Assembly: GCA_965649825.1 (NCBI GenBank)
Contig: OZ287697.1
Span: 186,001-250,000 of the forward strand
DNA: 64,000 nucleotides
Origin: Penicillus capitatus
Lineage: Eukaryota > Plantae > Chlorophyta
Direction: 5' to 3'
This document shows positions 24,645 through 64,000 of this stretch, piece after piece. Made by a program: the position numbers and the translations under genes. Within the stretch, counting starts at the first letter, position 1. Each line of letters begins with the position of its first letter. The notes beneath the pieces are model-generated. The model was not told the DNA's origin, did not search any database, and worked only from the letters and a program-made list of their open reading frames with translations.

Positions 24645-27600
24645 TCACTTCACCCTTGGATGGATCTTTATCCAAATGCCGTCCATTGATTCAGTGACCA
24701 GGCTATTCCGAGCCCTCATCATGAGATCGCCGAAAGGAATGGTTAACGACAATGTGTAATGTTCGACCAAACGGACGACGGCCAATCGCATCTGCAGCAG
24801 CGCCAATCGCTGTCCGACGCAGTCCCTTGGTCCATGCGAAAATCCGAGATAGTGTTTCTGAGATGTGTCCTCTCCATTCAACCATCGCTCCGGTCTAAAC
24901 TCCTTTGGACTTTTCCAATCGTCTTCTGCATCTAGCCATCGGTTACTGGCCAGAGCGATCTCAGTGCCGGGTGGCACACGATATCCCAGGACGTCCATGT
25001 CCTTTGTGGTGACGCGTGCAAAGGTCCCGGTAATCACATCGCAGATCCTCGTGCCTTCCTTCACGACGGCATACAGGTACGGCAAATCTGTTAGATTCTC
25101 CATACGGATCTCTCGCGCAGCTGATCCACTGGGTCCCTTATCCTTCAACTCCTTCAGAATGTTCTCAACGACGTGGGGATGAGAAGCCAGTAATGCGAGA
25201 ATCCATGCCAGTTGATGACCTGTCGTGTCCATTCCTGTCGTCACAACCGAAGCAACCTCCGCCCTCAGATTCTCGTACGAGATTGCTTTTCCGGTATCGG
25301 GATCAATCAGCGATCTTATCGTATGCCAGAAAGGCATTTCTCCTTGAGGCGGATCGTCTCTGCTCAGTACATCTTCCGTCACTCTGTCCCACTCGGCAGT
25401 GAGATCATCGATCATTGACTTCCGCAGCCGAGACATCGGAGTAAACGGAAAGAACGTGCAGTATAGTAATTTCAATGGGTTCACCTCTTCTTCGACAGCA
25501 AGGCGCCCCACTTCGATCAAATGTCGATGCAGATCTCGACTGCCGTCGAGTCCACCAGCGTTGACATCCAAAGCGACGCGACCAATGATATCCAATGTAA
25601 ATCTTGTGCAGAGTTGCTGCATATCTACTGCTCCATTGCTCCTTTCTGCTTCGATGCAGTCGATCATCTGATCGATGATGTCATGTGTCATTGGTATGGC
25701 GAGTTTCAGGTGTTTTGTATCGAAGGCTGTAAGGAAGCATTGACGAATGGCTCGGACAAAGGGCGTCGTTTTGGTGATGTTGAACAGATTCTTGGTACCG
25801 CTACCCCCGATCATCTGTCACATCAAAGAGTTTTGGCATAAACATACCAAACAGGATTCGATACTAACGATCTGGGCAGAGCTGAGGGTGACCTTCGGCA
25901 GCGCGCTTCTCTTCGACAGAAGAACGGATTTGGCGAAGTCCATGTCTCTGACAAAGAGTACCACCCGTCCGAAAAAGTTCAGCTGTGAAATTGTTCGCGA
26001 TCAGTGTAGGAAATGAACATCTAACTGTCATCTGTGTAACCACCGGAAGCGGTGGAGCCGTCACATAACCATCCAGGCGCGCCGACCATCGGTCGCGACG
26101 GATGTCGGCTCTCGACCTAACTTCCCCATAACGTAAGGGGTGTGGTTATGCTGCATGCACTAGGAGTTCGCAGCTGTTAGGACGTAAGGTTAGGAAGTCC
26201 ATAACCACCCTGGGTATATAAGGTCGACATTTCACCTTGTAACAACTCCTATTCGTATTGCCTCAAATCTGATTGCGTTTCTGTCGTGACGTTGCGCGAA
26301 GACTCGACTATCGTCTGAACCACTCTTACATACGATTCCCTACATTTGGTGGACCTCCGGGGCAACTGTCGAGCGTTTCCTATCGCTTCTGACGCAGCAT
26401 GCGCATCGAGTCGATTGCCTTCCCGCGTTACGATGGACGCACTGACCCTAGGAGATGGGTCAGCAAGATGACCTCGCTCTTCCGCCTGCAGCAAATAGAG
26501 GACCAGCCCGGGACGCGAGCCGAAATCGCAGTCACCTTGCTTGACGGACCAGCCGCGGATTGGGCTGAACTGCACCATGACGCCGACGCCCATCTGAATA
26601 TCGACTGGGCCGATTGGAGTCAGCTGGTGATCGACCGTTTTGTTCGCGACCAGGACCCTGACCGCGCCAGAGACCAGCTCAGACACATCTTCCAGAAGCG
26701 ACGGGAATCCTTGATCGCGTACGCTGAGCGCTTCGCCTTGATGTGTTCTAGAGCTCAGCCTGCTGTCGACCCAGACGATTACTACAAGTACTGGCTGAGA
26801 GGCCTCCGGAATGACCGCGCGGCAGAATACGCATTCACTCGACTTGCTGCAAGCAACAACGCGCCAACCTACGAATATGCCGTTCGCTATGCGAAGTACG
26901 CGACGGAGGCGCGCAAGAATGTCCGAGGGTACGAGGAGACCGACGAAGAGGAAGACGAACCTGAACCTCAACATGAAAATCGTAACCATCCGACGGTCCT
27001 CAAGGAGAACGGAGCTCGTCGCCTTGCGAAGACAGGGCGAAGAACCACAACCATCGTGGCTGAGGAACCGGCGGCGGATGACTCCGAAGACGAAGAACTC
27101 CGTCAACTCATCTCCGGACTGACAGGCCTGCTTGCGAAGAGGCAGGAAAAGCGACGCGCAAGACGCGCAGAATGCAACGCGTCTCGCTTCGTTGAGTCTG
27201 TGTCCGAGGATGAAGACAACGAGGGGGCTGAAGCAACCGCCAGAATGGCGGATGAAGATGAGCAGCAACCCAGTAAGCGACGCCGAGGTGCGCCAGGGAA
27301 GAAAGCGCGAAAGCCGCGCAAGAAACCTGAACTTGACCGAGAATGGGCGGACTATGCTGCGCAAGCATGGGCCATTCCACTGCGTTTCCTGAAAGGACGC
27401 AGCAAACGTGAGGTGTACTCCCAAGTGATACTGGCGCTGAGAGACGCGTTCGGTTTCACTCCAAAGCCCAAAAAGAAGAAGGGCGAAGATGAGCCTTCTG
27501 CTTCAGCACCACCGCAGCAGACCGACGTGTATATGGAACCGGCAGCGCAACAACCGCAAGGACCGCAACCGTACCAAGCCACCCTCGCGCAAAAACGAGG

Positions 27601-30600
27601 CGGCAGGGACTGGCTCGAGCGATGCAAGGTATTCGTCGCAGGGCAGTTCGTGCCCAAGGTGATTGTAGACCCTGGCTCCTCGAACTCCATAATGGATGCG
27701 GAGTTCGCCCGTCAATTCCGCATCAAGCACACTACGCCCAGCCAAGGAACGTTACTGCTTGCGGATGGTTCTGTCCAGAAACCGCTAGGACGCACTGACG
27801 AAGTTCGCGTCGAAGTGGGCGGTGTTTGGATACATCAAGCTTTCAGTGTCCTGCCGACGAAGAATTCATATGACATTCTTCTCGGTACGGACTGGCTGCG
27901 CACCGTCCGCAGCCGAGCCGACTTCGAAGAAGGAACGTATACCTTCGGAGTGAAGAAGCGCATTACGGTCGTGCCGAGGTGGCGCAAACTGTTTTTCGCG
28001 AAAAAGCAACCCACAGCAGTTGAAGACGATACCTCCGATGCCAGCAGCGAATCCGATATGGCCGCTGCATTGGAGGAGTTGATCGAGCAAATGCAAGCCC
28101 TCGCCAGCGATAGCGAGAGTGAGGACGAGGACGAATGCTTCCTTGCACTGAGCGACCAGGTGCTTGGCGAATTGCACGTCAACCCGAAATTGAAGCCTGA
28201 GGTGCTTTCGGATATCCGCTCTCTCGTCAGTGAATACGTAGACTGTTTTGCATTAACCTTTCAAGACATGGTCAGGACGCCTTTAATGCAATTCGAGATC
28301 GAGTTGCGTCAAGGAGAAGTCGCGAAGCGCTGTGGCCGGACGCGACGCCTGGCGCCAAAAGAAACTGAGTTCGTCAAGGCACAAATTGACGAGCTGCTTG
28401 AAGCCAAGCTAATCATCCCTTGGGAAGAGGCCGCGAGAAAATATGGCTGCCCAAAACGCAAGGATCGTTGGCTGTCGCCAATCACCATCGCACCAAAGAA
28501 AGACGGTACCTTTCGATTCTGTTGTGCGTACCAGCGCCTCAACGACGCCACCATTCCAGACAAGTTCGTTCTGCCACGAGCGGACGACCTGCTGGACCGC
28601 GTCATGGGTCACGCGTGGTACTCGGCCCTCGATGGATTCAGTGGGTATTACTCCCTTGGGCTGCATCCTGAATCCGTACTAAAGACGGCCTTCGCCACGA
28701 GCTTCGGTGTCTACTGCTGGCTTGTCCTCCCCTTTGGAGTGACGAACGGTCCGGCTGCCTACTCGCGCTTGGTCGAGCAAGTCTATGGCGGATTGGACCG
28801 AGTCGGCGTCTTCATCGACGACGTCTGTTGTGCACACCAAGACGAAACCGGGATCATTGAAGACTTGCGACATGTGTTTCAGCGCTGTCGCAATGGAGGT
28901 CTCCGCCTGAAACCGAAGAAGTGCTTTATTGGCTATCGAGAAGTCGACTTCCTTGGCCACCGGCTGTGCCCAGAAGGGATGAGAATGGATGAAGCCAAAG
29001 TTGAGAAAATCGCAAGGATGCCCTCGCCGACGGACAGAAAACAACTGCAATCTCTTTACGGCATGTTCTCCTATTATCGCCGCTTCCTGAAGAACTTCGC
29101 GGGCGTAAGTGCGCCGATGTCAAGTCTCCTTTCGACACGACGAGACTTCTTGTGGACTCCCGACGCCCAGAAGGCACTGGAGGAGTTGAAGAAGCTCCTT
29201 GTCGACGGAGCGGTTTTGGCGGCAGTCAACGAAGACCTGCCCTTTCTCGTCGACACGGATGCCAGCGCTTACGGAATCGGGGCCGTTTTGTCACAGGAGA
29301 AAGACGGTGAAGAGCGTCCGATCTACTTCTACTCCAGACTCCTAAAGGATGCTGAGACACGATACTCAGCCACCGAGCGAGAAGGATTGGCATTGGTTGC
29401 CGGGCTCAAGAAATTTCGCATCTATGTCTTAGGACGCAAGGTGGTCGCTCGAACCGACCATGCAGCATTGTCACATATGCTGCGCAAAACAGACCTGACG
29501 GGTCGTATTGCCCGTTGGAAGCTCATCTTGTCCGAGTACGACGTCCATTATGTGACGAGGCCCGGAGAGAGACACCGCAACGCTGATGGACTGAGTCGCC
29601 TGGTCGATGAAGATTCGGAACCTCGACCAGTCAATAAAGAAGAGGAATGCGATGAATGTCCAGCGCTCGTGGCCGAAGACGTTGCTTCCGCTTTCCAAGC
29701 CTGCCGCGAGTACGCAGAAATCCTCCCCTCGGTCAACGAACAGGACAGTCGATTTCGGTGGGGTGAGCGCAAACTTTTCTTTGAAGACTTAGATGGACGG
29801 CGCAAGATTTGTCTGCTGCCGAACCAAGTCCGCGCAGTCGTCGGTGAAGAACACTGCGTCGGACACTTTTCTGCCGAAATAACATTACAACGAGTAAGGC
29901 AAAGATATTGGTTTCCGAAGATGCGCAAGCAAGTACAAGATCTCGTGAAGACCTGCCAAACCTGCCAGTTATTCGGTTCCAAGCCCCCCATCCGTAGCAC
30001 TATCCCCATTGCCATCGAAGAACCATGGGAGCTGGTCGAGTTGGACACGGTCGTCGGCTTGCCGGCGACGCCGAGGAAGGCAGTAGGGTTCGTCACGGCG
30101 ATCGACTGCTTCACAGGATTCGTAATAACAGATGCATTGACGTCCTTGGGAGCTGCGAAGACCCTCAAGTTCTTTATCAATAAAGTTGTTTGCGCTTGGG
30201 GCGTGCCGCAGAGAATCCTGACGGACAACGGGACGGAGTTCCAAGGTGTCTTTGGTGAGACGGTGAAGAATCTCGGGATCGAGCATCGATGGTCGACGCC
30301 ACGATACCCCCGCAGCCATGGCAAAGTCGAGAACGTACAACGCCTCGTCCTTGACCGCCTGAGGAAGTGCCAGAATCCGAGAAGCTGGGACGAGAACCTC
30401 CCGGCTGCGACGTTTGCTGTGAACGCACGACGAGGCAAGTTCCTGTCGCCACTCGAACTTCTCACAGGGGTCGTGCCGAAAAGCCGCACTGAAGTGAATC
30501 TGTTAGCCGGCGAGAGCAAAGGGGATGCAGAGCCCTTGCAGACCGCCCTTGCAGACCGTCTGACCGATCTTGCGCTTTGTCGCGAGCGTTTTCGTGACTC

Positions 30601-31522
30601 TGCGAGGAAGATCCGCGAGTCCTGGACTGCAGAAGCCGCGATCCCACGCATCGAGCCTGGGAAAGAGGTCCGCGTCTATCGACTTGAAGACCACGGGAAA
30701 CTCGAAGCAGCGTTCGAGAAAGGTGTCGTGACGTGGTGGGGGAATCAAGGAGCTTGCAGAGTACGGGTCGATGGCCGCATGAAGAGAGTACCGCAGTTCT
30801 GCGTGAAGCCGTGGATCGCTCCCCAATAAAGTTTTAATAACGCTCAATGGTTCTACCTTTTACCCGAGTTTTGTGTTTCGTTCATTCTGTCACTTAAACG
30901 TCGGGACCTGACGTGTTAAGTGAGGAGGAGTCACTGTAGGAAATGAACATCTAACTGTCATCTGTGTAACCACCGGAAGCGGTGGAGCCGTCACATAACC
31001 ATCCAGGCGCGCCGACCATCGGTCGCGACGGATGTCGGCTCTCGACCTAACTTCCCCATAACGTAAGGGGTGTGGTTATGCTGCATGCACTAGGAGTTCG
31101 CAGCTGTTAGGACGTAAGGTTAGGAAGTCCATAACCACCCTGGGTATATAAGGTCGACATTTCACCTTGTAACAACTCCTATTCGTATTGCCTCAAATCT
31201 GATTGCGTTTCTGTCGTGACGTTGCGCGAAGACTCGACTATCGTCTGAACCACTCTTACATACGATTCCCTACAATCAGCTTTGTGGAAGAAAGGGCGTT
31301 TGGTGATACCTTTATGATCTTTGGCCAGCCGAGACGCTTCCACCAGTAGGCGCGTACGTACGTGATCTCTTTTGCGCCGCTGCCGCCGAGGAAGAGCAGC
31401 GTGTGGCCGAGTAGAGGCCACTCGGGCGGGGAGGGTATTTTGTGAATGTCGTACTTCCACCGTACCCAAAGCGCTCTCGCGCAAAGAATGGCCACGAAGG
31501 CAACAAAGAGTTGCAGAAGCAT
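24645..31522 (-). CDS. Cytochrome P450 (P450-7, same subgroup as P450-6), ~498 aa; intron 1 contains the Gypsy element
   Basis: Exons 31522-31310, 25982-25869, 25814-24645, all open. Motifs TGMDTT, KEGTR, PERW, FSHGPRDCVG. Removing the element and one TSD leaves a 52-bp intron. Confidence 0.88.
26005..26344 (+). repeat. 5' LTR
   Basis: Identical by eye to 30935-31274. TATATAA at 26215 and TGTAA at 26238. Confidence 0.95.
26347..26362 (+). promoter_or_regulatory. Primer-binding site, probably for tRNA-Ala
   Basis: TGGTGGACCTCCGGGG 2 nt after the LTR. The complement ends ...GUCC-A-CCA, giving U70-C71-C72-A73 as in tRNA-Ala acceptor stems. Confidence 0.6.
26399..30829 (+). CDS. Gag-Pol polyprotein, 1476 aa
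   Basis: Gag (FPRYDG...W...RF), protease (IVDPGSS), RT (LDGFSGY, LPFG, VFIDD), RNase H (TDASAYGIGAVL, TDH, ADGLSR), integrase (H-H-C-C; ELDT, TDNGTEF, GKVE). No stops or frameshifts. Confidence 0.96.
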   Translation: MRIESIAFPRYDGRTDPRRWVSKMTSLFRLQQIEDQPGTRAEIAVTLLDGPAADWAELHHDADAHLNIDWADWSQLVIDRFVRDQDPDRARDQLRHIFQKRRESLIAYAERFALMCSRAQPAVDPDDYYKYWLRGLRNDRAAEYAFTRLAASNNAPTYEYAVRYAKYATEARKNVRGYEETDEEEDEPEPQHENRNHPTVLKENGARRLAKTGRRTTTIVAEEPAADDSEDEELRQLISGLTGLLAKRQEKRRARRAECNASRFVESVSEDEDNEGAEATARMADEDEQQPSKRRRGAPGKKARKPRKKPELDREWADYAAQAWAIPLRFLKGRSKREVYSQVILALRDAFGFTPKPKKKKGEDEPSASAPPQQTDVYMEPAAQQPQGPQPYQATLAQKRGGRDWLERCKVFVAGQFVPKVIVDPGSSNSIMDAEFARQFRIKHTTPSQGTLLLADGSVQKPLGRTDEVRVEVGGVWIHQAFSVLPTKNSYDILLGTDWLRTVRSRADFEEGTYTFGVKKRITVVPRWRKLFFAKKQPTAVEDDTSDASSESDMAAALEELIEQMQALASDSESEDEDECFLALSDQVLGELHVNPKLKPEVLSDIRSLVSEYVDCFALTFQDMVRTPLMQFEIELRQGEVAKRCGRTRRLAPKETEFVKAQIDELLEAKLIIPWEEAARKYGCPKRKDRWLSPITIAPKKDGTFRFCCAYQRLNDATIPDKFVLPRADDLLDRVMGHAWYSALDGFSGYYSLGLHPESVLKTAFATSFGVYCWLVLPFGVTNGPAAYSRLVEQVYGGLDRVGVFIDDVCCAHQDETGIIEDLRHVFQRCRNGGLRLKPKKCFIGYREVDFLGHRLCPEGMRMDEAKVEKIARMPSPTDRKQLQSLYGMFSYYRRFLKNFAGVSAPMSSLLSTRRDFLWTPDAQKALEELKKLLVDGAVLAAVNEDLPFLVDTDASAYGIGAVLSQEKDGEERPIYFYSRLLKDAETRYSATEREGLALVAGLKKFRIYVLGRKVVARTDHAALSHMLRKTDLTGRIARWKLILSEYDVHYVTRPGERHRNADGLSRLVDEDSEPRPVNKEEECDECPALVAEDVASAFQACREYAEILPSVNEQDSRFRWGERKLFFEDLDGRRKICLLPNQVRAVVGEEHCVGHFSAEITLQRVRQRYWFPKMRKQVQDLVKTCQTCQLFGSKPPIRSTIPIAIEEPWELVELDTVVGLPATPRKAVGFVTAIDCFTGFVITDALTSLGAAKTLKFFINKVVCAWGVPQRILTDNGTEFQGVFGETVKNLGIEHRWSTPRYPRSHGKVENVQRLVLDRLRKCQNPRSWDENLPAATFAVNARRGKFLSPLELLTGVVPKSRTEVNLLAGESKGDAEPLQTALADRLTDLALCRERFRDSARKIRESWTAEAAIPRIEPGKEVRVYRLEDHGKLEAAFEKGVVTWWGNQGACRVRVDGRMKRVPQFCVKPWIAPQ
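30918..30930 (+). promoter_or_regulatory. Polypurine tract
   Basis: AAGTGAGGAGGAG 4 nt before the 3' LTR. Confidence 0.75.
30935..31274 (+). repeat. 3' LTR
   Basis: Direct repeat of 26005-26344 at offset 4930. Confidence 0.95.
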
Positions 31523-37850: not shown

Positions 37851-38471
37851 CTGAACTCATCTGTGCACCAAATACAATGGGAACGGTCCTTCAACTGTTG
37901 TTAGACGCCCTCCCGATCTTTCCGAAAGGGAGATGTAAAAGCCTTAAAAGGAAAAAGAACCCATTTTAGTGTAGGCGGCGATGTAATTGACAACCATTTG
38001 TTGCCACAGTCGAGCACAACCATTCAGATGTTCTGATTCTACCCTTCATCGTTATCTTTATCCCCTACAATCGTAAAACTATCTCGAAAAGCAACCGAGG
38101 TCGACGAATTCATCATAGGAACCATCAAAGCGACTGTTTCGCCAGTTTCATCTGCGGCGGTTTGTTTTGGGTAAAAGTCCGTGGTAATTGATGGATTGAA
38201 AATGACGGCATGGTAGTGTCAGGGGAAATCTTCACTGTGTTACAGAGCACAGTATCTACAGGGCCACGTTCCCGTATTTGTAAGGATCCCGAGGTGACGT
38301 AAACCCTTAGTAAGTGCCCCCTCGGAGACAGAACCCTCGGAAATCTAGGCAGTCACGATGTGACTGCTCTAGTCATTCTGACAGGTAGCGAAGACACTAC
38401 GAAATGGACATCAGAAAGAACATTAACATTAATCCGCGTTCGTTCGTCGTTTCCCGCCGCCTCGCATCCGC

Positions 38472-39187
38472 TGTCGTGTTTGTCAACGGACGAGTTAACG
38501 ACGAAGGCGTAAAGCTTACAAAGACTGTTTGTACATTAAATATTAGAATTTAAACAATTCTTTGGACAGCTGCACGAAGGTGGACAGCTGTCCACTGACA
38601 TGGGCCCACCCCCTTTCCGTTGTGCAGACTCCGAATGATGCGAACGGAACACATTTCACGACAGTCGGGATGTCCTCAGGCTGGCCAGGAGTCGAGCCAG
38701 GGCCATCGTCACGTGGCTTCTCCCTCTGCGGCCCATTCGCCGCAGCTTTGTAGCTCTTATGTCTCTGAGACTTCAACGCCGACTCTGGAAATTTGAACCG
38801 TACTTCACAGCGACAACACGTCCGTGATGACCCAGATAGAAAACGTAAACACAGACAAAGTAACAACGAACGTAAACACAACAATGCGCAACAGTACGCT
38901 TATCGCAGCGTGAAACTGAAACGCAGCAACTCGGACGATGGAACGAACTACAGAATGCAGGTGGTAGGTAGAACGCTGTCACCACGGACGTGTCTTGGAA
39001 AGTCTTCAGTCTTCGATGACGGGATTCTATCGCCGGAATCTTTGTCGCTCCGAAACCATGTCGTGTTTGTCAACGGACGAGTTAACGACGAAGGCGTAAA
39101 GCTTACAAAGACTGTTTGTACATTAAATATTAGAATTTAAACAATTCTTTGGACAGCTGCACGAAGGTGGACAGCTGTCCACTGACA
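38472..39187 (-). mobile_element. TRIM (terminal-repeat retrotransposon in miniature), 716 bp
   Basis: Identical 129-bp terminal direct repeats (38472-38600, 39059-39187) with TG...CA ends and 4-bp TSD CCGC. On minus: PBS TGGTTTCGGAGC and PPT GGAAAGGGGGTGGG. Confidence 0.85.
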
Positions 39188-39346
39188 CCGCATGCGCGCC
39201 GACGGCGTCCGGTGCACCGCGCCGCGCGCATGACAGTAATAGTAACTGATTAACTAAAGACGACTACAACAGAACAATGTCATTCGGTCGAGCGCGTTTG
39301 GCATCGGCCACGGGTGCCGTAGTGAATATTTTAAAAGCCAAAACGT

Positions 39347-43259: not shown

Positions 43260-46200
43260 TCATGGAGCAAGGAGATGGATAAGAGCAGTATACGTTTCAT
43301 GGGAACAGTCGGAATCCCTTTCGGCGCATACGACATCCAACGGAATTAATCCAAAATTACCAGCGACCTGCTTCGACGCGCCGGCTGTCACCAGATCCTA
43401 TCACCAACCACAGAATCACATCTCATCATCAAGGCATGCGATGTATCTCGCCTCTGCTACTCCTAGCGCTCCAGTGAACGATGCGAGATGAAGTGGTGTC
43501 CATCCACCCTTCTCGGCAGCATTGACGTCTGCATGGTGATTGATCAGAGCCTAAGAAGACAGATTCATAAAAGAATGAGAAGGGAAGCTGCCCAGAAGTC
43601 TGCCTTTGCAATGTTGTCGTATCCGAAGTATGCGGCTTGATGAAGTGCCGTCCATCCATCATTCATGACCTTGTTGACATCTGCTCCATGATCCATGAGA
43701 CACTGTTAACGCAGGTGCAGTGCGGGAGAGACAACAGATCGGATGGAACTTTTGCGGCGAGGAAATGGCCTCGAGATGTTGCTCGATGGAGCGGTGTCCA
43801 TTGATAGGCGTCCAGTACATCGCACATTGCTCCATGGTCGATCAGAATCTAACAATGGATGTCTCAGACAAAACAAGAATCCTCCGGAATTCAAGTTCAC
43901 CTCAACACCTTTCGTGTATCCATAATCAGCTGCAACATGGAGTGGTGTCCATTTGCTCACGTATTCAACTGCATCGATCTGAGCGCCGTGGTCAACAAGA
44001 AGCTACAGGTATACGTTGAGGCAGCGAGCAGGGTGGAATTGGAAAGGAGGCGTGCCATGACAATATCGGTGTATCCAAGAGCAACAGACATATGAAGAGG
44101 GGTCAACCCTTCGAAGTCAGCAGTATTGATCTCTGCGCCTTGATCGATAAGAAACTGCGAAAGACAGCGCGTGGTGTTGGATTATTAGAGAGACGGACGG
44201 ATGGGTTAACCTTAGACATCTCTGTATGACCGTTCCGCACTGCCTTGCTCAGTGCTGTCTTGCGTTCCACGTCGAAGGCATTCACACGTGCACCGTGATC
44301 GATGAGGAGCTGCACATAGAAATGCTGTTGGTCCGTGGTGCAGAAGACGTTTATTTTTCACCTTTGCCATCTCTATAAATCCATAACGAGCAGCGCAATG
44401 CAACGGAGTTCTGTTATCGATCGACAACGCTTCGATCTTCGCTCCGTTATCGACGAGTATCTGTCGGCAGGTATCTCCTGATCGCGCGACCCGTATGGAG
44501 CAAGAGCGCTTCACCTTGGCAATTTCGAGATATCCTTGACATGCTGCCTGATGAAGCACGGATTGGCCATTATTCATGGATGCATTGACATCCGCTCCAT
44601 GATCCACAAGCACCTATGCATGTCAGTCAGTCTGATACCATAGAGCATGCGACCCCCGGTCGATCGCACTTGCACACTCCGAATGTGATTGTTTTCGATT
44701 GCTGCATGAAGTACCGACATGCCTTTGCCGTCAACAGCGTCAATCTTTGCTCCACGATCCAGAAGGATCTGTGAACAGACACACGTACCCACCCATACGT
44801 TATCCGGAACTCCTTGAATGCATTGTTGAGTCTACCTCAACCAAGTCCGCAAACCCTGAGAACGCTGCAATGTGAAGTGGCGCCCATCCAATGTTCTCTG
44901 CCAGGTCGATGTCTGCTCCTTCATCGATCAGTATCTTGTGTGCGTACACAGCAGCCACTGTCGATCTGTCTTGAGTCGAGAGAAACTCACCACGGCCATC
45001 CCTGTATGTCCATAACGTGCGGCCAGATGGAGGGCTGTCCATCCGTTGTTCTTGACGATCCTGACATCAGCTCCATGTTCGATAAGAAACTGCAGATGTC
45101 CAGCACTCATCACTGCAGTTCGGATATTGAAGAGCATTTCTCACTTTCACAACGTCGGTGTGATTGAATCGCGCTGCTCTGTGAAGTGGTGTCCCGCCTT
45201 CTATGCTTAACGCATCAACCTCTGCGCCGTTGGCAACCAGAATCTGTCAACCACCCGCTTCCTGAGTCTATTGCCATACAGTACTCGGCATCCACCTTGA
45301 CGATACTCGTGTGCCCTTCATTTGCCGAGAGATGCAGTGGCGTCCATTTCTCGTTGTCCCTGGGGTCAATCTCGGCTCCGTGACGGATCAGGACCTGTGA
45401 GTAGAGACATCAGCTGCCGCCATTACTGGATGCAATCCGTGTTCACTTTGGCGACCTCTGTGGTTCCTTGATGCGCTGCGCCGTGAAGAGGCGTCAATCC
45501 TCGGTATTCAACGGCTTCGATGTTTGCTCCATGCTCAATGAGCAACTGCCACAACGCACCCATTGCCCAAGGGGTTTGCAATAGCGATAGAGTTTACTTC
45601 TGCGATCTTGGAATATCCGTACTTCGCTGCACCGTGAAGTGGCTTCTGTTCTTCCGTGTAGACAGCATCGGGATCTGCCCCGTGTTCAAGAAGTATCTAC
45701 ATCGATGCTCATGGACTGGACGAAACGATCTTAGAATGTGCCTGAACGACGCTGGCGTGACCCTTAAGAACTGCCATATGAAGTGGAACAAAGTGGTGAA
45801 CAGTGGTGGCATTGACACGCGCTCCATGCTCCAACAGAATCTGCAGATGAACATCTGCCATAACATGTGCGACCCCGCTATCGATTTCGACGCCACCTTT
45901 GAGATCTCTAAGGATCCTTGAAACGCCGACATGTGAAGCGCTGTCCAGTTTTGATGATCGACCGATTCGAGATCGGCTCCGTGATTGACCAGCTCCTGCC
46001 GGCACACATGAACAGCGTTCAGGCCATCTGGACAGTACCTTGAGAATTTTAACGTATCCACGAATCGCTGCGAAATGAAGAGCTGTCGTTCCATCATTCG
46101 TCAGAGGGATGTTGACATCGGCTCCATAATCCATAAGAACCTGTACACGTGTGACGGCTGTGTCCGACTTCCTTTGATCGGCACTGACCTTTGCCGTTTC

Positions 46201-48463
46201 ATTGTGTCCATAGTAAGCTGCGTGATGCAGTGCGGTATCATTGTTCTTCATGACAGCATTGACGTCTGCCCCAGATTCCAGAAGAACCTACACTTATGGA
46301 CTTCCCTTCCCCCCATACCATAACTCGATTTCCCCCACCTTCACCACGTCAATGTGTTTGTTGATGGCAGCCTCAAACAATGGCGTCTCTCCATCGTTTG
46401 CTCTGCTGTTGACGTCAGCTCCATAGAGGATCAATATCTGTCAAATGCTTTCGAGATCAGCTGCTAGACGTAAAGAGTGATCAGCACCTCGACGATCACT
46501 TTGTGTGCGTTCACCGCTGCTCTGTGCAACGGACGTCGGCCGTTTTTGTCTTTGACATTGACATCAGCTCCGCCAACGATAAGAGCCTTCAGCGAGATAT
46601 CATCGACAGCAAAGGACACAGGAGCAGTCATACATGCACTGCCTCAAGATTTCCGTTCGATGATGCTTTGTGCAATGGCGTGTCGCCCTCTGGATTGACG
46701 GCACTGACGTTTGCTCCTCTCTCTATAAGCACCTGCATCACATCGATCTGTTCAATCGTGCGCCAGCAGCGCGAGATGTACTGGAATGACAACACTGCCT
46801 CCCTCTGTTGCCATATGCAAAGCACTGACACCCATTTCGTTCAGAGCATTCACATCTGCTCCATTATCCAAGAGCCACTGATACGACACTTGGTTCAGGA
46901 TATGGAGTTGCAAGGGACGTCATCTCACACCTTCACGGTACGCAGATCTCCATTGCTGGCTGCGATATGAAGAGGATGGCGTTCATTTGCTTCCGTTCTT
47001 GTTTGCTCCGTGGCATTTTCTGTAAACAACTGAAACGAGAAGTGTGATCTGATTGTTCATTGATGGTCGGTCACACCTTTACGAGGTCGAAGTGTTTATT
47101 GTCCGCGGCTACGAACAGAGGCTTCCATCCAGCGTCATCCGACGCTTCTATATCAGCACCCTTTTCGATGAGCACCTGATGCGACAGTTTGATCAAGGCA
47201 AGTAGACTCGGCGTATATCGGATCTCGCTTTCGCAGAAGCTAGTTGCCCCGATGCTGCTGCCATGATCAGCGGCGTCTGTCCCTCTGTGTCTCGTGCGTC
47301 AACGTTCGCTCCATTCTCGATCAGCACCTGTCGATCCTATGCTAGAAACGGAGAAGGGCAAAAGTGCGATGCTCACGCTGGCAACATCGACATGTCCTTT
47401 CTCTGCTGCAATGTGTAAGGCAGTCTGTCCATCTTTTCGAAAAGCGTTAACGTCTGCTCCCTCTTCGATCAGGATCTGTTTCATGCTGGCATTGTTTGTT
47501 GGTTTGCATTAAGTGATCGCACTTTTGCGGAGGCGTTTCTTCCTTGAGAAGCAGCGTTATGGAGGGATGTTCTTCCGTAGTGATCGGCGGCATTGATACC
47601 AGCGCCGTACTGGATAAGCACCTAGAAACCGCAAGGGTCGATGCCTCCTGGCTTCTTTGTGATTCTGGAGTCGCACTTTCATGACAGAGCGTTGTTCGTT
47701 CTTTGCACTCAGACTCAATGGACTCTCTCCATCTACGTTCATTGCATCTAACATCGCTCCAGATTCTGCCAAGTACTAGATGACACAGACACGTATGCAG
47801 ATCTACAGGATGGAGACAAGAGAGACAGAGATGCACCCGACATTCGAGAAGTCCATCCGCAAAAAACTGTCCACGCGCATTGCTAATCACAACCAAACGG
47901 GAACTCTTGTCTCGAAGAACATCAGCCGATTGGACGATGCATTCTGGTCAAGAAAGACAGGTGACTGTTCGCAGCTGACCTTTGCCACAGCTGCGGATCC
48001 ATAAGTTGCCGCCACATGTAATGGAGTCATCAGCCGTTCGTTCATTTGATGGATGTCCGCCTCGTGCTCCACTAGAACCTTCACACAAACGGGTCAGTGT
48101 CCCAAGACGCGTCAAGGAGACAGACGTGGTGTACCTTGACACAGTCGAGTGCATCGAACGCCGATGCCCAGTGCAGCAGCGTCGAGCCTTGGCCAAGGGA
48201 GCCGTGCTTCGTATTGTCAACGTGGTAGGTGGCGTTGGATGAGAGGCCTTCGGCGAGAAGATCAGCAGCTTTCCAGTTTTCATCCTTCTCGAAGGCTTTC
48301 AACATTTCCTGAAGGTATTGGCAAAGCGCAGATAGTGTTTAGATGGAATAAATAGGCAGTGTGTTTGTTGTACGAGTAGTTCTTGCTGCCGAGGCGTCAC
48401 TGTCTTGGTTTTGAGAGATGTGGCAAGATCATCTCTGTTCGGATTTTTGACGGATTCGAATAC
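43260..48463 (-). CDS. Long ankyrin-repeat protein (~31 repeats); possibly the C-terminal part of a protease-ankyrin fusion
   Basis: Exon 48308-48135, then 30 phase-0 exons of 96-102 nt (48078-47980 through 43550-43452), each LI..GADVNA....G.TPLH.AA..G, then terminal exon 43397-43260. Likely upstream exon 48463-48374. Confidence 0.85.
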
Positions 48464-48611
48464 CTACAAGACACGAGTTAGTGCGTGCATCTGATTTACA
48501 GCGAGGGGCATGTCAATAGGCAAACTCGATCTCGATCGTGTCCAGAGGCAACTGGATTTGCAGGGAAGAGAGATAGAGAGGAGGTGCAATTGTAATCGGA
48601 AAGGGGGGTGA

Positions 48612-49883
48612 TCACAGAGCAGTAAGATTTCCTACCGTCGATTCTTTCTGCATAATGTCTTTCATCCAATCCAGGAAATCTGATACTCTAGTATATACGG
48701 CAGGGGTCTCCCCACTACATCCGGGTGATCCGAATGAGGTGATCCCGACGATGATATCATATCGTGGCTGTTCTTGTGATATACCGTATTTATGTGTGCC
48801 CTTTCGGATCAACGGACCTCCTGAATCACCTAAATGCGAAAGAAGGTCGAAGCAAGATAAAAGAAGGGCCAGTATTTCGACTGCCTACCACGACAGCTGT
48901 CCATGCCTCCGCCGCCAGCACAGATCATATGAGCATCGAGAGTTTCGTTAAGAGCCTCTTCGCATGCACTCGACGGAACAATTGGAAGCTTCTCAGCGAG
49001 CTGCAACACGCCTGATGTCTTAGTCGTTTTTGTGGAACCCCATCCAGCCGACGCCATTAGATCTCCAAATTCCAGCACAGACCCGACGCCGTCAACGAGT
49101 GGACGGGCGAGAGGGGCCTTCCTGTCCAGCCTTATCAGTCCGATATCGAATCCCTCGACGATGTTGCCAGTCCATCCCGAAGGCCAGTACGCCTTCTTCG
49201 ACTGGTACAGCTACAAGGGCAGCGACAGGTTCAGTTCTCCTTCGAGATCGACCCTCTCCGGCTTGCTTACGCTCTCCGGGTCGCTGGTGTCGATCTCGTG
49301 GATGCCGCAGCGGACGACGCCGTAGTGGCCGACGCCGTTGTGCCGGTCGTTGGACAGACAGTGCGCCGCCGTCAGGACCCACTGCTCGTCGATCAGCGCC
49401 CCTCCGCAGACGTGCTCTTCGGTCCCGCGCCGACGCAAACTGCACACGTAAGGGAACCTCTCTCTCGGCGCCTGGATTCCGCCCTGTGCGAATGCCAATC
49501 GCGCACATGCTCGGCGACTGCACCGACCGCACCGCGATCCTCGGCTCGCCGCGGTTGGCTTGGACGTCGACTTCGTCGGAGTTTTTGCGGAAGGCGGATG
49601 CTCTCGGCGGTTTAGAACGCGCGGCCAGGCTGCCTGACGTCGCATCCTCCTCCCCCCTCTGCCGGACGACAGCAGACAGTCGTCAGCGGAGCGGTTGGAA
49701 GGCGCAAAAGCACCTCGATTTCTCCGAAGGCGAGGACGTCGGACAGACTGTCGGCGCCCTGGCCTGGAGACACAGGGCGTGACCGACCCGCGAGACGACG
49801 CTTCGCGAACCGTGGATGGCGGCCGTCGGTGCCGGCGAATGCAGCAGGAAGCAGAAAAACACGAAGAGAAGCGGCCGCTTCAT
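48612..49883 (-). CDS. Trypsin-family (S1) serine protease with signal peptide
   Basis: Hydrophobic start MKRPLLFVFFCFLLH. Splicing 49532-49484 creates the activation site EPR|IAGG. Triad motifs LTAAHC (His 49361-49363), DIGLIRL, and DSCRGDSGGP across intron 48888-48830 (Ser 48822-48824). First-intron boundaries uncertain. Confidence 0.9.
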
Positions 49884-60963: not shown

Positions 60964-63900
60964 CTAAACAACTGGCACAGTTGGATACAATAACGCAGCA
61001 AGGGCATATCGAGTCTTATCGGAGCAATTGGCATCATCCGCAACACAGACAAGGTTGAACGGGATCATTCCGAAAATGTTTACACTCAGCTTCGATGCAC
61101 CAGCTGCAACAAGATCCTGTCCAGACAGAGTTTTATTCTACTGGCAATGCGAGTGAGGCAAGTTACTCTTGCAATGGCTAAATGTCCGTTGTACGATGCG
61201 AGATGAAGTGGCGTCCATAATCTCTGCTCAACGGCGTTGACATTCGCTCCATGGTCGACGAGAATCTATGACGAAATATTTACTTTACAGTGATGTGGAT
61301 AAGGCTTGCGGTCGACCTTTGCGATCTCTCTGTGCCCCTCGCTTGCTGCGCAATGCAACGGAGTCATTTTGGTGTTGCTAGCGTGAACGTCGATCGTTGC
61401 ACCGTGATCGATGAGGATCTGCGAACAGACACCCACTAGTTGTGTCGTAGGGTAAAGCGACGAAGAGCAACCAACCTTTGTCGTCTCGATCTGTCCATCG
61501 AGGACAGCCAAGTGAAGTGGTGTCTGTTCTGTTTCTCCAACGCTGTCAACGTCAGCACCGTGCTCGATCAAAACCTGGACAGTTATCGATGACGGGTGCT
61601 GGAGAGGTTAGATGCCTGAGAATGTACCTCAGCTGCTCGGATGTGTTTTCCAACAATAGCCTCAATGAGTGGTGTCAAATTATTCTGGTCAACAGCCTCG
61701 GTATCTGCTCCGTGATTGATGAGCAACTGTGATCAGATATCCGCTGCAAATGTTGTCTGGATGTGTGATGGTTTACTTCGATCAGTTTAATATTTCCTCT
61801 CTGTACCGCTTGATGCAGCGAAGTCCGTCCATCGCATGGTGTAGCAGTGACATCCGCTCCACGCTCCATGAGAATCTGTGGATGTTGGCCCAGTTTGCAG
61901 AAAAGCTACTCTTAACAGATAGGCCTCCACCTGTGCAATGACGTTGTTATTCTGCAACACAGCTTTATACAGTGGCTGATGTCCTTTGTTGTCAACGGCG
62001 TCAATTTTGGCTCCGTTGTCAATCAACAACTGCAGATCATTCTATGCTCAAAGGTTGTTATCGAACAGATAAGGAGCCCACCTCAACGATTTCAATGCAG
62101 TTATAATACGCCGCCTGGTGCAAAGGAGTCCATCCATCTGGCATGACAGCAGTAACGTTCGCTCCGTGATCAATGAGAAACTGGATGGAGGTGAGTGTGA
62201 TCGTTCGGAGGAATTGGAAGCTCAATGTGACGTCACCTTTGCAACCTTGACATGACTATTTCGGAGAGCTGTGTTCAGCGGCTGATATCCTCTATTGTTC
62301 ACTGCGGCTATATCCGCACCGTGATTTACGAGAATCTATGCATGTGCAGAAGAGTGACCAGATCAGATCGGACATTCAGTACCTCTGCAGTCTCGATATG
62401 TCCGTCATAAGCTGCCATATGGAGCGGTGTATTTCCCTCGATACCAACGGCCTGAATGTTTGCTCCGTTATCGACGAGGATCTATAGAGGCCACATATGC
62501 AATCTCGCAAAGTAAGAGGTAGGAGCTGAAGTTCACCCTGGCGACTTCGACGTGTCCTGCAAAGACTGCGACGTGCAGTGGGGTCATATGATAATTTGCA
62601 ACAGCATCAATTGCTGCCCCATGATCGATAAGACTCTGGGAACATATACTGAGTGCCCTTGAAGGAATGGATGAGAGATTACTTGTGCGATTTCTGCATT
62701 TTCTATTGAGGCTGCACAATGGAGCGGCGCCATTCCATCTTGCCCCACACTGGCGTTCACATCTGCTTCGTGATCGAGGAGAATCTGCCAATAGATCACC
62801 AATGCACGAGCGACGTTTACTGGATCCAATACATTCACCTCGACGATTTTTAGGTATCCACGTGAAGTGGCTAGATGAAGAGGCGTTTCTCCAAAGACTG
62901 AGGCTGGACTAACTTCTGCCCCATTGTCAAGAAGAAGCTGCACAGCGAACCACAGATCTACAGATTGCCCCTCACCACCGTTGCCGTACCTCGACGATCT
63001 CGATGTATCCGAAAAATGCTGCCTTATGGAGGGCACTCCAATTGCCGAGAAGACGGCCATTGACATCCGCTCGATACTCGATAAGGAGCTGCGTATGGAT
63101 GACCGGGCTCAGGGTAGAAACGCATTCGATACGCCATTCACCTTTGCTATTTCAGCGAAATCATGAGACGCTGCATAGAGAAGACTCGTCCATCTATTAT
63201 CCTTGGTAAAATTGGCATCCGCTCCACTTTCCAGAAGTGCCTAGACATCTCACGCTCACATAATCTCCATGCAACGGCGGAGATCCCAATGCACTTTCAT
63301 GACAACAAAATGTCTGTTAACGCATGCCTCGAACAAAGGAGTTTCGTCCCTATTGCTCACAACATCGATGTTGGCTCCGTGTGAGATCAGGATCTGTGAG
63401 TCACTCACGAGGTCCAGATCACGATAGGGATGCGATGTTACCTTTGTCACACTCAAATGCCCTTTGGATGCTGCGCCGTGCAAAGAACAGCGGCCATCGT
63501 TGTCGACAGCGTCGACATCGCCTCCGTTTTCCAGTAGCACCTTCAGCGATCGGATTATCGGATCAGACAGCAAGATCGATCCCTATGTCTCACCTCCACT
63601 GTCTCGCCCTGCCCATTGAGTGACGCTAAATGCAGCGGTGTTTGACCCTCTTTGTTGACAGCATCGGTATGCGCTCCGTTTTGGATAAGTATCTGATCAG
63701 AATCGACCATGGCGTCGAAGAGTGCAATGTGGAGCCGGTCTACCATGATGATCTGACTGTGTCCTCCTTCTGCTGCCTTGTGCAGGGCCGTTGCGCCTCC
63801 CTGTTCCACAGCGCTCACATTGGCTCCACGATCCACCAGCCACTGTTGCCGTTTGAATCTCCGTGACAAGCATCTCGGCGTGGCGATGTCTCACCTCGAC

Positions 63901-63996
63901 AACCTCTGTGACGCCGGCACTCGCGGCCACGAGAAGAGCCGTCCAGCCAAACTTGTCGGAGCTTTCTATATCGGCGACATCCTCCTCAAGGAGCAA
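60964..63996 (-). CDS. Second ankyrin-repeat gene, 3' part (continues past the right edge)
   Basis: 19 phase-0 exons of 99 or 102 nt (63996-63895 through 61265-61167), plus terminal exon 61116-60964 homologous to the terminal exon at 43397-43260. Confidence 0.85.
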
Positions 63997-64000
63997 CTAA

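What the first reader, a model, noticed from the sequence alone, without database searches (positions are those of the whole stretch)
43260..49883. Candidate secreted trypsin-ankyrin fusion: an intact S1 protease joined to ~31 ankyrin repeats
Seen: the protease has a signal peptide, R|IAGG activation site, full His/Asp/Ser triad and an S1-pocket Asp (DSC), and it ends only ~170 bp before ankyrin-gene exons on the same strand. A phase-0 donor (ACG|GTAGGA, 48635), exon 48463-48374 and exon 48308 splice in frame with canonical GT-AG sites, giving about 1450 aa. Little room remains for a separate promoter. Known: S1 proteases are extracellular zymogens, whereas ankyrin arrays are mostly intracellular binding scaffolds. 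Inference: a modular recognition-plus-proteolysis protein (defence, wound response or wall remodelling) with variable repeat specificity. This is the strongest novel-system candidate here.
Basis: partly seen in the sequence, partly recalled or inferred. Interest (0 to 1): 0.8.

Follow-up and report, generated by a model that had tools for sequence, protein, structure and literature searches.

The report
Secreted trypsin fused to 31 ankyrin repeats
A green-algal gene appears to encode one secreted protein that joins an intact trypsin-type protease to a very long ankyrin-repeat binding arm; shorter relatives exist unnamed in siphonous seaweeds, and nobody has described what they do.

Summary
On the minus strand there is a five-exon S1A (trypsin) gene with a signal peptide, an R|IAGG activation site, the His/Asp/Ser triad and an Asp189 pocket. 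It is followed by a 90-nt linker exon, an N-cap exon, 30 one-repeat ankyrin exons and a C-cap exon. Joined at the phase-0 donor at 48636|48635, these 38 exons give one 1465-aa reading frame.

No transcript data for this organism could be found, so the fusion rests on comparison:
- Three paralogous or related loci keep the same phase-0 donor, a stop-free linker exon of exactly 90 nt, and the N-cap. One is the second copy, whose protease half lies just beyond base 64000.
- The read-through sequence after the trypsin donor is not conserved.
- In both copies from this species the linker exon has no ATG and follows an in-frame stop.
- Signal peptide–trypsin–ankyrin proteins with homologous linker, N-cap and a C-cap carrying two invariant cysteines occur in Bryopsis and Caulerpa, and in an mRNA-like contig.

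I judge a single fused gene about 75–80% likely. It is a mosaic secreted protease with an ankyrin arm acting as an exosite or anchor. Its target and biological role are unknown. It is a new variant of a known kind, of moderate interest.

The parts
49714..49883 (-). Exon 1: start codon at 49883, signal peptide (MKRPLLFVFFCFLLHSPAPTAA) and the start of the propeptide.
   Evidence: The hydropathy maximum is at residues 4-24. The tandem copy in L003 is nearly identical.
49533..49656 (-). Exon 2: propeptide, ending ...NRGEPRIA, which is the first half of the R|IAGG activation site.
   Evidence: L001 has an intron at the same position (ARIA|...|GGS).
49271..49483 (-). Exon 3: GGIQAPRERFPYVCSL...TAAHC, carrying catalytic His139 (His57 in chymotrypsin numbering).
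   Evidence: The His is invariant in alignment A2.
48889..49210 (-). Exon 4: catalytic Asp191 (DIGLIRL) and the S1-pocket Asp273 (MDSCRG).
48636..48829 (-). Exon 5: GDSGGP (Ser279) to ...DIMQKEST. It ends at the phase-0 donor ACG|GTAGGA.
   Evidence: An equivalent phase-0 donor sits after ES[T/E/G] or EDA in L001, L002 and L003.
48464..48635 (-). Intron A (172 nt), the junction intron. If it is retained, the protease ends ...VGNLTAL at TGA 48614-48612. A TGTAA motif lies at 48500.
   Evidence: Neither the read-through tail nor the TGTAA is conserved in the three related loci.
48374..48463 (-). Linker exon: 90 nt, 30 aa (VFESVKNPNRDDLATSLKTKTVTPRQQELL), phase 0 at both ends. It has no ATG and is preceded by an in-frame TAG.
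   Evidence: All four loci have an open exon of exactly 90 nt here. It aligns with the linker of the Caulerpa fusion proteins.
48135..48308 (-). N-cap exon: EMLKAFEKDENWKAADLLAEGLSSNAT...DALDCVK. It contains the only candidate independent start codon, ATG at 48305.
43452..48078 (-). 30 ankyrin-repeat exons (27 of 99 nt, one of 96 nt, two of 102 nt), one repeat per exon. All introns are phase 0; 29 of them are 43-67 nt and one is 204 nt. GC donors follow the exons ending at 47229, 45742, 44056, 43604 and 43452.
43260..43397 (-). C-cap exon: DLVTAGASKQVAGNFGLIPLDVVCAERDSDCSHETYTALIHLLAP, with the stop codon at 43262-43260. It has two family-invariant cysteines.
60964..64000 (-). 3' part of the second, tandem trypsin-ankyrin gene: 19 ankyrin exons plus the C-cap exon at 61116-60964. 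Its first six ankyrin exons and its protease half lie beyond the window end.

Best explanation
The interval 49883-43260 (minus strand) is one 38-exon gene for a 1465-aa secretory-pathway protein. The domains, in order, are a signal peptide, a propeptide of about 74 aa, an S1A trypsin-type catalytic domain, a 30-aa linker, and an ankyrin solenoid made of an N-cap, 30 repeats and a disulfide-type C-cap.

It belongs to a family of signal peptide-trypsin-ankyrin proteins found in siphonous green algae (Bryopsis, Caulerpa). In this lineage the ankyrin arm is greatly lengthened: 17-30 repeats, against about 2-12 in the relatives seen.

Likely mechanism:
1. The signal peptide takes the protein into the ER.
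2. Cleavage after Arg96 frees the Ile97 N-terminus and switches on the Arg/Lys-directed active site (Asp189-type pocket).
3. Because the ankyrin arm is C-terminal to the catalytic domain, it stays covalently attached after activation.
4. The arm then acts as an exosite or anchor that selects the substrate, or fixes the enzyme to a partner or matrix.
5. Paralogues with different arms would have different targets.

Shown here: the exon structure, the intact catalytic residues and disulfide cysteines, the conserved in-frame junction, and the fused homologues. Inferred: that the junction intron is actually spliced, that the protein is secreted, and that the ankyrin arm provides targeting.
For: 1. 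Gene model. The 38 exons have consistent phases and give one 4398-nt ORF. Pfam finds Trypsin plus ankyrin repeats.

2. Conserved junction. In L001, L002 and L003 the trypsin exon ends at a phase-0 GT donor. A stop-free linker exon of exactly 90 nt follows, then the N-cap exon (E/K)ML..FE.D.NW.
- The flanking introns vary in length (121-172 nt and 52-65 nt in the three loci measured) and do not align better than shuffled sequence.
- The chance that a 30-codon frame stays open is 0.19-0.23 per locus, or about 0.002 for all four.
- Codon position 2 is more conserved than position 3.

3. Linker exon needs an upstream exon. In both copies from this species it starts GTA or GTG, has no ATG, and follows an in-frame TAG. 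It can be translated only if spliced to the protease.

4. No conserved C-terminus for a stand-alone protease. Read-through tails after the donor are 7, 35, 80 and 2 codons long and unrelated in sequence.

5. Fused relatives.
- The closest trypsin homologues are Bryopsis sp. KO-2023 and Caulerpa lentillifera proteins. Many of them carry Trypsin plus Ank domains.
- They align colinearly through the linker and N-cap.
- The C-cap has two invariant Cys in 9 of 9 members.
- A Bryopsis exon runs from GDSGGP through the end of the trypsin domain into the linker without a stop.
- Logan contig L004 carries an uninterrupted 594-aa signal peptide-trypsin-ankyrin ORF with UTRs, and a TGTAA 12 nt before its end, so it looks like an mRNA.

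6. The second ankyrin gene of the window is also preceded by a trypsin gene.

7. Location and integrity.
- No hydrophobic segment lies between the protease and the ankyrin repeats, so both domains share one compartment.
- The three canonical S1A disulfide pairs are invariant.
- The repeats keep the ankyrin consensus. Variability is concentrated at binding-surface positions: 3.37 bits against 2.01 bits.
Against: - No transcript, EST or peptide from this organism could be found. The junction query found only a genomic ORF, and two JGI scans found nothing.
- An in-frame stop lies 7 codons past the donor. A TGTAA motif, the green-algal polyadenylation signal (from my own knowledge), lies 115 nt further on, at 48500. 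A stand-alone 348-aa protease mRNA is therefore possible.
- The N-cap exon has a conserved Met at 48305. In L001 and L002 the linker exon begins with ATG, so independent ankyrin translation cannot be excluded.
- Five ankyrin introns need GC donors, which are weaker sites.
- Ankyrin arrays in the secretory pathway are rare.
- Secretion was judged from hydropathy alone, without a dedicated predictor.
- The AlphaFold model of the Bryopsis relative shows two domains joined by a disordered linker. It gives no information on how they cooperate.
Confidence: 0.72

Rival explanations
1. Two separate genes. A 348-aa secreted trypsin ends at TGA 48612. A cytosolic ankyrin protein of about 1093 aa starts at ATG 48305 (MLKAFEKDENW...). 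Their adjacency would be a leftover of an ancestral fusion that has since split, or a co-duplicated gene pair.
For: - There is a stop 7 codons after the donor and a TGTAA at 48500.
- A Met is conserved at the N-cap in all four loci, and ATG is the first codon of the linker exon in L001 and L002.
- Ankyrin arrays are normally cytosolic (general knowledge).
Against: - The linker exon stays open, at exactly 90 nt and in phase, in four diverged loci. In the two copies of this species it has no start codon.
- The trypsin tail after the donor is not conserved.
- Only 148-306 nt would be available for a terminator plus a promoter.
- The N-cap and C-cap are homologous to those of proteins that are fused in Bryopsis, Caulerpa and an mRNA-like contig.
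- The invariant Cys pair in the C-cap fits an oxidising compartment (the disulfide itself is inferred).
Confidence: 0.13
2. One locus, two products. Regulated retention of intron A, or polyadenylation within it, gives a free secreted protease. Splicing of intron A gives the protease-ankyrin fusion.
For: - Intron A (172 nt) is three times longer than the typical ~50-nt introns and contains an early stop and a TGTAA.
- Caulerpa and Bryopsis have close paralogues that are trypsin-only or carry only a remnant of the N-cap (P0002, P0005, P0006).
Against: - The TGTAA is absent from the equivalent intron in L001, L002 and L003.
- The read-through tails vary from 2 to 80 codons, so no conserved short isoform is evident.
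- No expression data are available.
Confidence: 0.12
3. A decaying or non-functional repeat array, that is a pseudogene. On this reading the GC 'donors' mark dead splice sites.
For: - Five of 37 donors are GC.
- The related locus L001 has a retroelement integrase ORF directly after its array, and no C-cap was detected there.
Against: - All 38 exons are open and in phase over 4.4 kb, with every ankyrin exon 96-102 nt long.
- The repeats keep the structural consensus.
- GC donors recur in all four loci, often in the classic GCAAGT-like form, which suggests genuine GC-AG introns.
Confidence: 0.03

Closest known systems
Predicted trypsin-ankyrin proteins of Bryopsidales: Bryopsis sp. KO-2023 BSKO_04795, BSKO_04705 and BSKO_04697, and Caulerpa lentillifera g5115 and g5122. 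All are unnamed hypothetical proteins.
   Same: - Same order of parts: signal peptide (where the model is complete), S1A domain, linker, N-cap, ankyrin repeats, C-cap.
- Homologous N-cap (…L.EGL…NA…) and a C-cap with two invariant Cys and a terminal …LL.. motif.
- 33-40% identity in the protease domain.
   Different: - Those proteins have about 5-12 repeats and are 455-742 aa long. The window gene has 30 repeats plus caps and is 1465 aa.
- The Caulerpa and Bryopsis linkers contain cysteines; the window linker has none.
- None has been studied experimentally, as far as the searchable literature shows.
Animal mosaic S1A serine proteases: complement and coagulation factors, CLIP-domain proteases, and hepsin, matriptase and enteropeptidase.
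   Same: - Secreted zymogens activated by cleavage before I(V/A)GG.
- Asp189 trypsin-type specificity.
- Non-catalytic binding modules that confer target selectivity.
- The closest solved catalytic domains are elastase, kallikrein, hepsin and matriptase.
   Different: - The animal accessory modules are N-terminal, extracellular-type domains (CUB, EGF, kringle, LDLa, CLIP, SRCR), held to the protease by a disulfide after activation.
- Here the module is C-terminal, contiguous with the catalytic domain, and built from ankyrin repeats.
- No solved structure covers both domains in one chain.
The S1 peptidase expansion in Ostreobium quekettii (Iha et al., bioRxiv 10.1101/2020.07.21.211367).
   Same: A siphonous green alga with 159-189 S1/trypsin-domain genes, about 40% of them with signal peptides. 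The authors interpret this as expanded external proteolysis. Genome GC of 52.4% is similar to the window's ~50%.
   Different: The paper does not mention ankyrin fusions. The window's organism could not be identified, and no Ostreobium-named protein appeared among the hits.
HtrA/DegP proteases (S1C protease with C-terminal PDZ domains).
   Same: The same logic: a trypsin-fold protease followed by C-terminal protein-binding modules that recruit or gate substrates. This comparison is from general knowledge.
   Different: A different subfamily (S1C, with no zymogen N-terminus), PDZ rather than ankyrin modules, and an oligomeric cage. No sequence relationship was found here.
Canonical ankyrins (ANK1-3 membrane-binding domain, 24 repeats) and other long ankyrin solenoids, including extracellularly acting latrotoxins.
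   Same: A long uninterrupted ankyrin solenoid. The one-repeat-per-99-nt-exon organisation is like the human ANK genes (general knowledge). The Bryopsis model's ankyrin part superposes on ankyrin-1, AnkB and DARPins.
   Different: Ankyrins are cytosolic adaptors with no protease domain and no signal peptide. Latrotoxins have no S1 domain.

Membership tests
Peptidase family S1A (chymotrypsin/trypsin) | Full-length match to the trypsin domain profile. | tested here: met
   Pfam PF00089, E=1.5e-45, profile positions 1-220 of 220. The best PDB matches are elastase, kallikrein and hepsin over residues 1-243 of the query.
Peptidase family S1A (chymotrypsin/trypsin) | Catalytic triad His57/Asp102/Ser195, plus Asp194. 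| tested here: met
   His139 (TAAHC), Asp191 (DIGL) and Ser279 with Asp278 (GDSGGP). These are invariant in the family alignment.
Peptidase family S1A (chymotrypsin/trypsin) | Zymogen activation site that generates an I(V/A)GG N-terminus. | tested here: met
   R96|IAGG forms across the exon 2/3 junction. The same intron position occurs in L001. The cleavage itself was not tested.
Peptidase family S1A (chymotrypsin/trypsin) | Conserved disulfide cysteines (42-58, 168-182, 191-220). | tested here: met
   Cys124/140, Cys252/266 and Cys275/314 are invariant in alignment A2. That they are bonded is inferred.
Peptidase family S1A (chymotrypsin/trypsin) | Proteolytic activity with Arg/Lys preference. 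| not testable with these tools
   Asp273 (position 189) is present. Position 226 is Ala rather than Gly. The effect of this on specificity is unknown.
Ankyrin-repeat proteins | Tandem repeats of about 33 residues matching the ankyrin profile, with the TPLH/GA.. consensus. | tested here: met
   Pfam Ank/Ank_2 with 20-24 stretches, E down to 0. The consensus is xLIxxGADVxAxxxxGxTPLHxAAxxGHxxxAK.
Bryopsidales-type signal peptide-trypsin-ankyrin fusion family | Colinear homology through the linker and N-cap to proteins known to be fused. | tested here: met
   Alignment A1.
Bryopsidales-type signal peptide-trypsin-ankyrin fusion family | Family-specific C-cap with two invariant Cys and a terminal LL motif. 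| tested here: met
   Alignment A4, 9 of 9 sequences.
Bryopsidales-type signal peptide-trypsin-ankyrin fusion family | Protease and ankyrin parts on one mRNA or polypeptide in this organism. | not testable with these tools
   - No transcript-derived protein of this species is in the databases.
- Indirect support comes from the conserved junction.
Secreted / secretory-pathway proteins | Cleavable N-terminal signal peptide and no downstream membrane anchor. | tested here: inconclusive
   - The n/h/c-region pattern is present and the hydropathy maximum is at residues 4-24. No other segment exceeds 1.5 on a 19-residue Kyte-Doolittle scan.
- Homologues have similar N-termini.
- No dedicated predictor and no experiment was available.

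The most novel reading that the evidence does not exclude
Siphonous green algae may possess a diversifying family of 'addressable' extracellular or luminal proteases. A constant trypsin warhead would be coupled to a rapidly evolving ankyrin solenoid that recognises different targets, for example microbial, wound-exposed or matrix proteins. This would be a recognition-plus-proteolysis system analogous in logic to immune protease cascades. The one-repeat-per-symmetric-exon layout, together with frequent weak GC donors, would allow exon skipping to vary the length of the arm.
Probability: 0.12. Interest if true: 0.8.

Novelty: new variant of a known kind. Interest (0 to 1): 0.5.

Why it matters
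If the fusion is real and secreted, it would show an ankyrin solenoid, normally a cytosolic scaffold, working as the targeting arm of an extracellular zymogen protease. It would do so at a length (30+ repeats) matched by few proteins.

It would also add a domain-architecture dimension to the known but unexplained expansion of S1 proteases in siphonous green algae. These are giant single cells with striking wound-healing ability and, in Ostreobium, a substrate-boring way of life.

The family gives a direct handle for asking what these proteases cut: pull-downs with the ankyrin arm. Finally, it offers natural long ankyrin arrays that have adapted to an oxidising compartment, which is of interest for repeat-protein engineering.

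Tried and rejected
1. Transcript evidence.
- A homology search with the junction peptide found only one genomic ORF, P0121.
- Exact-match scans of JGI metagenome contigs for the spliced junction and for an N-cap exon 30-mer found nothing.

I did not try to work around this. I modelled the Bryopsis relative P0008 instead. That model confirmed only two folded domains joined by a disordered linker. The fold search matched each domain separately.

3. Family census. The profile search of 1.84 billion representatives was swamped by giant ankyrin and poly-trypsin proteins. It added only three more Bryopsis-like members, so it is not a usable family count.

4. Organism identity. A RuvBL1 fragment from the co-assembled contig is too conserved. 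Its best hits were Chara and angiosperms at 80-85% and a gene-model protein g5250.t1 at 83%. I can say only that the organism is in the green lineage, with its nearest protease relatives in Bryopsidales.

5. Selection test. The window and L003 are identical across the ankyrin part of the second gene (0 differences in 3.18 kb), so this gave no information.

6. A transmembrane segment between the domains would have put the ankyrin repeats in the cytosol. None was found.

7. Literature searches for trypsin plus ankyrin in Bryopsis, Caulerpa, Ostreobium or Halimeda found no description of this architecture.
Full report
**What is in the sequence**

The window is eukaryotic, about 50% GC, with short introns. 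On the minus strand an S1A protease gene starts at ATG 49883 and has five exons with GT-AG introns. The translation has the following features:
- a typical signal peptide (MKRPLLFVFFCFLLHSPAPTAA), which is the hydropathy maximum of the protein;
- a propeptide of about 74 residues;
- the activation site R96|IAGG, formed across the exon 2/3 junction;
- His139, Asp191 and Ser279, with Asp273 at the base of the S1 pocket;
- the six cysteines of the three canonical S1A disulfides.

Pfam Trypsin matches end to end at E=1.5e-45. The nearest solved structures are elastase, plasma kallikrein, hepsin and matriptase. If the last exon is read through its donor (ACG|GTAGGA, exon end 48636), it stops after seven codons at TGA 48614-48612.

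Downstream on the same strand I assembled the following exons:
- a 90-nt exon (48463-48374);
- a 174-nt N-cap exon (48308-48135);
- thirty exons of 96-102 nt, each encoding exactly one ankyrin repeat;
- a 138-nt C-cap exon that ends at the stop 43262-43260.

All of these introns are phase 0. They are 43-67 nt long, apart from one of 204 nt. Joined to the protease at 48636, the 38 exons give a 4398-nt ORF of 1465 aa with a single terminal stop. Pfam reports Trypsin plus 20-24 ankyrin stretches.

**Is it one gene?**

No expression data for this organism could be reached, so the test is comparative.

*Related genomic loci.* The trypsin search recovered genomic ORF fragments from long ENA metagenome contigs, and I fetched them. 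L003 matches window 64000-54689 at 99.5% and is identical over the 3.2 kb of it compared base by base, so it is the same species. It shows what lies beyond base 64000. The window's second ankyrin gene (C-cap at 61116-60964) is preceded by a second trypsin gene with the same signal peptide and propeptide. L001 comes from the same sample at the same coverage. L002 comes from another sample. Both carry more distant copies, about 50-60% identical in protein.

*The junction is conserved.* All four loci share these features:
- the last trypsin exon ends in a phase-0 GT donor after ES[T/E/G] or EDA;
- an intron follows, 172, 121 and 142 nt long in the window, L001 and L002, and unalignable between loci;
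- then comes a stop-free exon of exactly 90 nt behind a TGTAG/TATAG acceptor;
- then a short intron (65, 52 and 53 nt in the same three loci);
- then the N-cap exon (E/K)ML..FE.D.NW.

The linker exons are only about 30-37% identical in protein, yet all remain open. The chance of this is 0.19-0.23 per locus, or about 0.002 for all four. Codon position 2 is better conserved than position 3. The flanking introns are no more alike than shuffled sequence.

*The linker needs an upstream coding exon.* In both copies of this species the linker exon begins with GTA or GTG, contains no ATG, and is preceded by an in-frame TAG. It can be translated only as a continuation of the protease. The tails produced by reading through the donor are 7, 35, 80 and 2 codons long and unrelated in sequence. 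There is therefore no conserved C-terminus for a stand-alone protease.

*Relatives elsewhere.* The best-scoring named homologues of the protease are from Bryopsis sp. KO-2023. EukProt entries that a cluster look-up identifies as Caulerpa lentillifera also score highly. Many carry Trypsin plus Ank domains.
- Their sequences show signal peptide, trypsin, linker, ankyrin repeats and C-cap, in that order.
- They align colinearly with the window's fusion model through the linker and N-cap.
- Nine of nine family members, including both window genes, L002, Caulerpa, Bryopsis and Logan contigs, share a C-cap with two invariant cysteines and a terminal LL motif.
- In Bryopsis one exon runs from GDSGGP through the end of the trypsin domain into the linker without a stop, and two such genes sit side by side.
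- A 2256-nt Logan contig holds an uninterrupted 594-aa signal peptide-trypsin-Cys-rich-ankyrin ORF with 5' and 3' UTRs and a TGTAA 12 nt from its end. It looks like a green-algal mRNA.

The fused architecture is therefore real in relatives, and the window's ankyrin gene is the ankyrin half of that family from cap to cap.

*What remains against it.*
- The early stop after the donor, and a TGTAA at 48500, could support a short protease mRNA. That motif is absent from the other three loci.
- A Met is conserved at the N-cap.
- The linker exon starts with ATG in L001 and L002.

I put a single fused gene at about 0.72. Splicing that yields both a short and a long form, and two separate genes, are the main alternatives. 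A pseudogene is very unlikely given 38 open, in-phase exons.

**How it probably works**

No hydrophobic segment separates the two halves. The ankyrin arm therefore travels with the protease through the secretory pathway. The invariant cysteine pair in the C-cap fits that, although the disulfide itself is inferred.

Activation at Arg96 would free Ile97 and form the active enzyme. The arm is C-terminal, so it stays attached after activation.

The repeats keep the structural ankyrin consensus. They vary most at the positions that form the binding surface in designed ankyrin proteins: 3.37 bits against 2.01 bits.

Paralogues differ in repeat number: 30 and 25 in the two window genes, and 17 or more found in each of L001 and L002. 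They also differ in sequence. Only repeats 1 and 3-9 are colinear between the two tandem copies.

The most economical reading is a mosaic protease whose ankyrin arm serves as an exosite or anchor that sets target selectivity. An AlphaFold model of the Bryopsis member shows a trypsin fold, a disordered linker and a confident ankyrin domain. It says nothing about how the domains are oriented relative to each other. The target and the biological role (nutrition, wall or matrix remodelling, wound response, defence) are unknown.

**Comparison with what is known, and novelty**

The protein passes every sequence-level test for S1A and for ankyrin repeats. It works like the mosaic serine proteases of animals, but its accessory module is C-terminal and of a type not used there. 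No solved structure contains both domains.

The Ostreobium genome paper reports a large expansion of S1 proteases, about 40% with signal peptides, in a siphonous alga. It does not mention ankyrin fusions. The Bryopsis and Halimeda genome papers mention neither domain. Targeted literature searches found nothing on this architecture.

Fused homologues are already public as unnamed hypothetical proteins, and the principle (a protease plus a binding module) is familiar. I therefore rate it a new variant of a known kind, with interest 0.5. The 30-repeat arm is the longest among the family members I saw, which have about 2-12 repeats.

**Limits**

- The organism is unidentified. It belongs to the green lineage, and its nearest protease relatives are in Bryopsidales.
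- The signal peptide was judged from hydropathy only.
- The first two protease exons are less certain than the rest of the model.
- The GC-donor introns are inferred from the regular 99-nt exon length and from their recurrence in all four loci.

Noticed in passing
window 64000-60964 (-); L003 8441-14260: A second, tandem trypsin-ankyrin gene with 25 ankyrin exons. Its protease half lies beyond the window end and was recovered from the 99.5%-identical contig L003.
   Followed up: yes
window 50796-47894 (-) compared with L003 7543-10413: The two tandem copies show mosaic identity.
- Upstream region, trypsin exons 1-4 and part of exon 5: about 90% nucleotide identity.
- N-cap and first ankyrin exon: 95-100%.
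- The stretch between them (window 48727-48364: the end of exon 5, intron A and the linker exon): unalignable.
- The rest of the ankyrin arrays: only about 50% protein identity.
This looks like patchy gene conversion that skipped the junction.
   Followed up: partly
window donors after 47229, 45742, 44056, 43604 and 43452 (-); also L001, L002 and L003 ankyrin introns: GC-AG introns are unusually frequent in these ankyrin arrays: 5 of 37 introns in the window gene, and about 14 of roughly 95 ankyrin-exon donors across the four loci. They often have the GCAAGT-like form. All the exons are symmetric and phase 0, so skipping one would remove exactly one repeat.
   Followed up: partly
window minus strand: 6614-5436, 9280-8108, 12764-11595, 17264-16100, 21518-20181, 23691-22534, 25796-24654, 35615-34266, 41951-40776, 54269-52914, 59529-58180: Eleven cytochrome P450 paralogues lie in tandem, 44-74% identical in protein to the copy at 54269-52914. 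The copy at 17264-16100 is split by a frameshift near 16683. The trypsin-ankyrin genes are embedded in this array, and a P450 gene lies just upstream of each copy, which suggests a shared duplicated unit.
   Followed up: partly
window 26001-31274 (+): A Ty3/gypsy-type LTR retrotransposon. It has a 1478-aa gag-protease-RT-RNaseH-integrase ORF (26393-30826), flanked by 344-bp LTRs that are 99.7% identical, so the insertion is probably recent.
   Followed up: partly
L001 14542-15856: In the paralogous locus L001 an integrase (rve) ORF follows the ankyrin array directly, and no C-cap was detected. A retroelement may have truncated that copy.
   Followed up: no
window 51875-51743, 51284-51152, 38469-38600, 39059-39196: A dispersed repeat of about 140 bp, 83-86% identical to L003 6899-7049. 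It occurs upstream of the trypsin gene and again near 38.5-39.2 kb in the opposite orientation.
   Followed up: no
L002 18878-18750 (-): Another trypsin-like exon (…CSGTLIKDKYVLTAASCL) lies about 4.5 kb downstream of the L002 trypsin-ankyrin gene, on the opposite strand. This fits local clustering of S1 genes.
   Followed up: no
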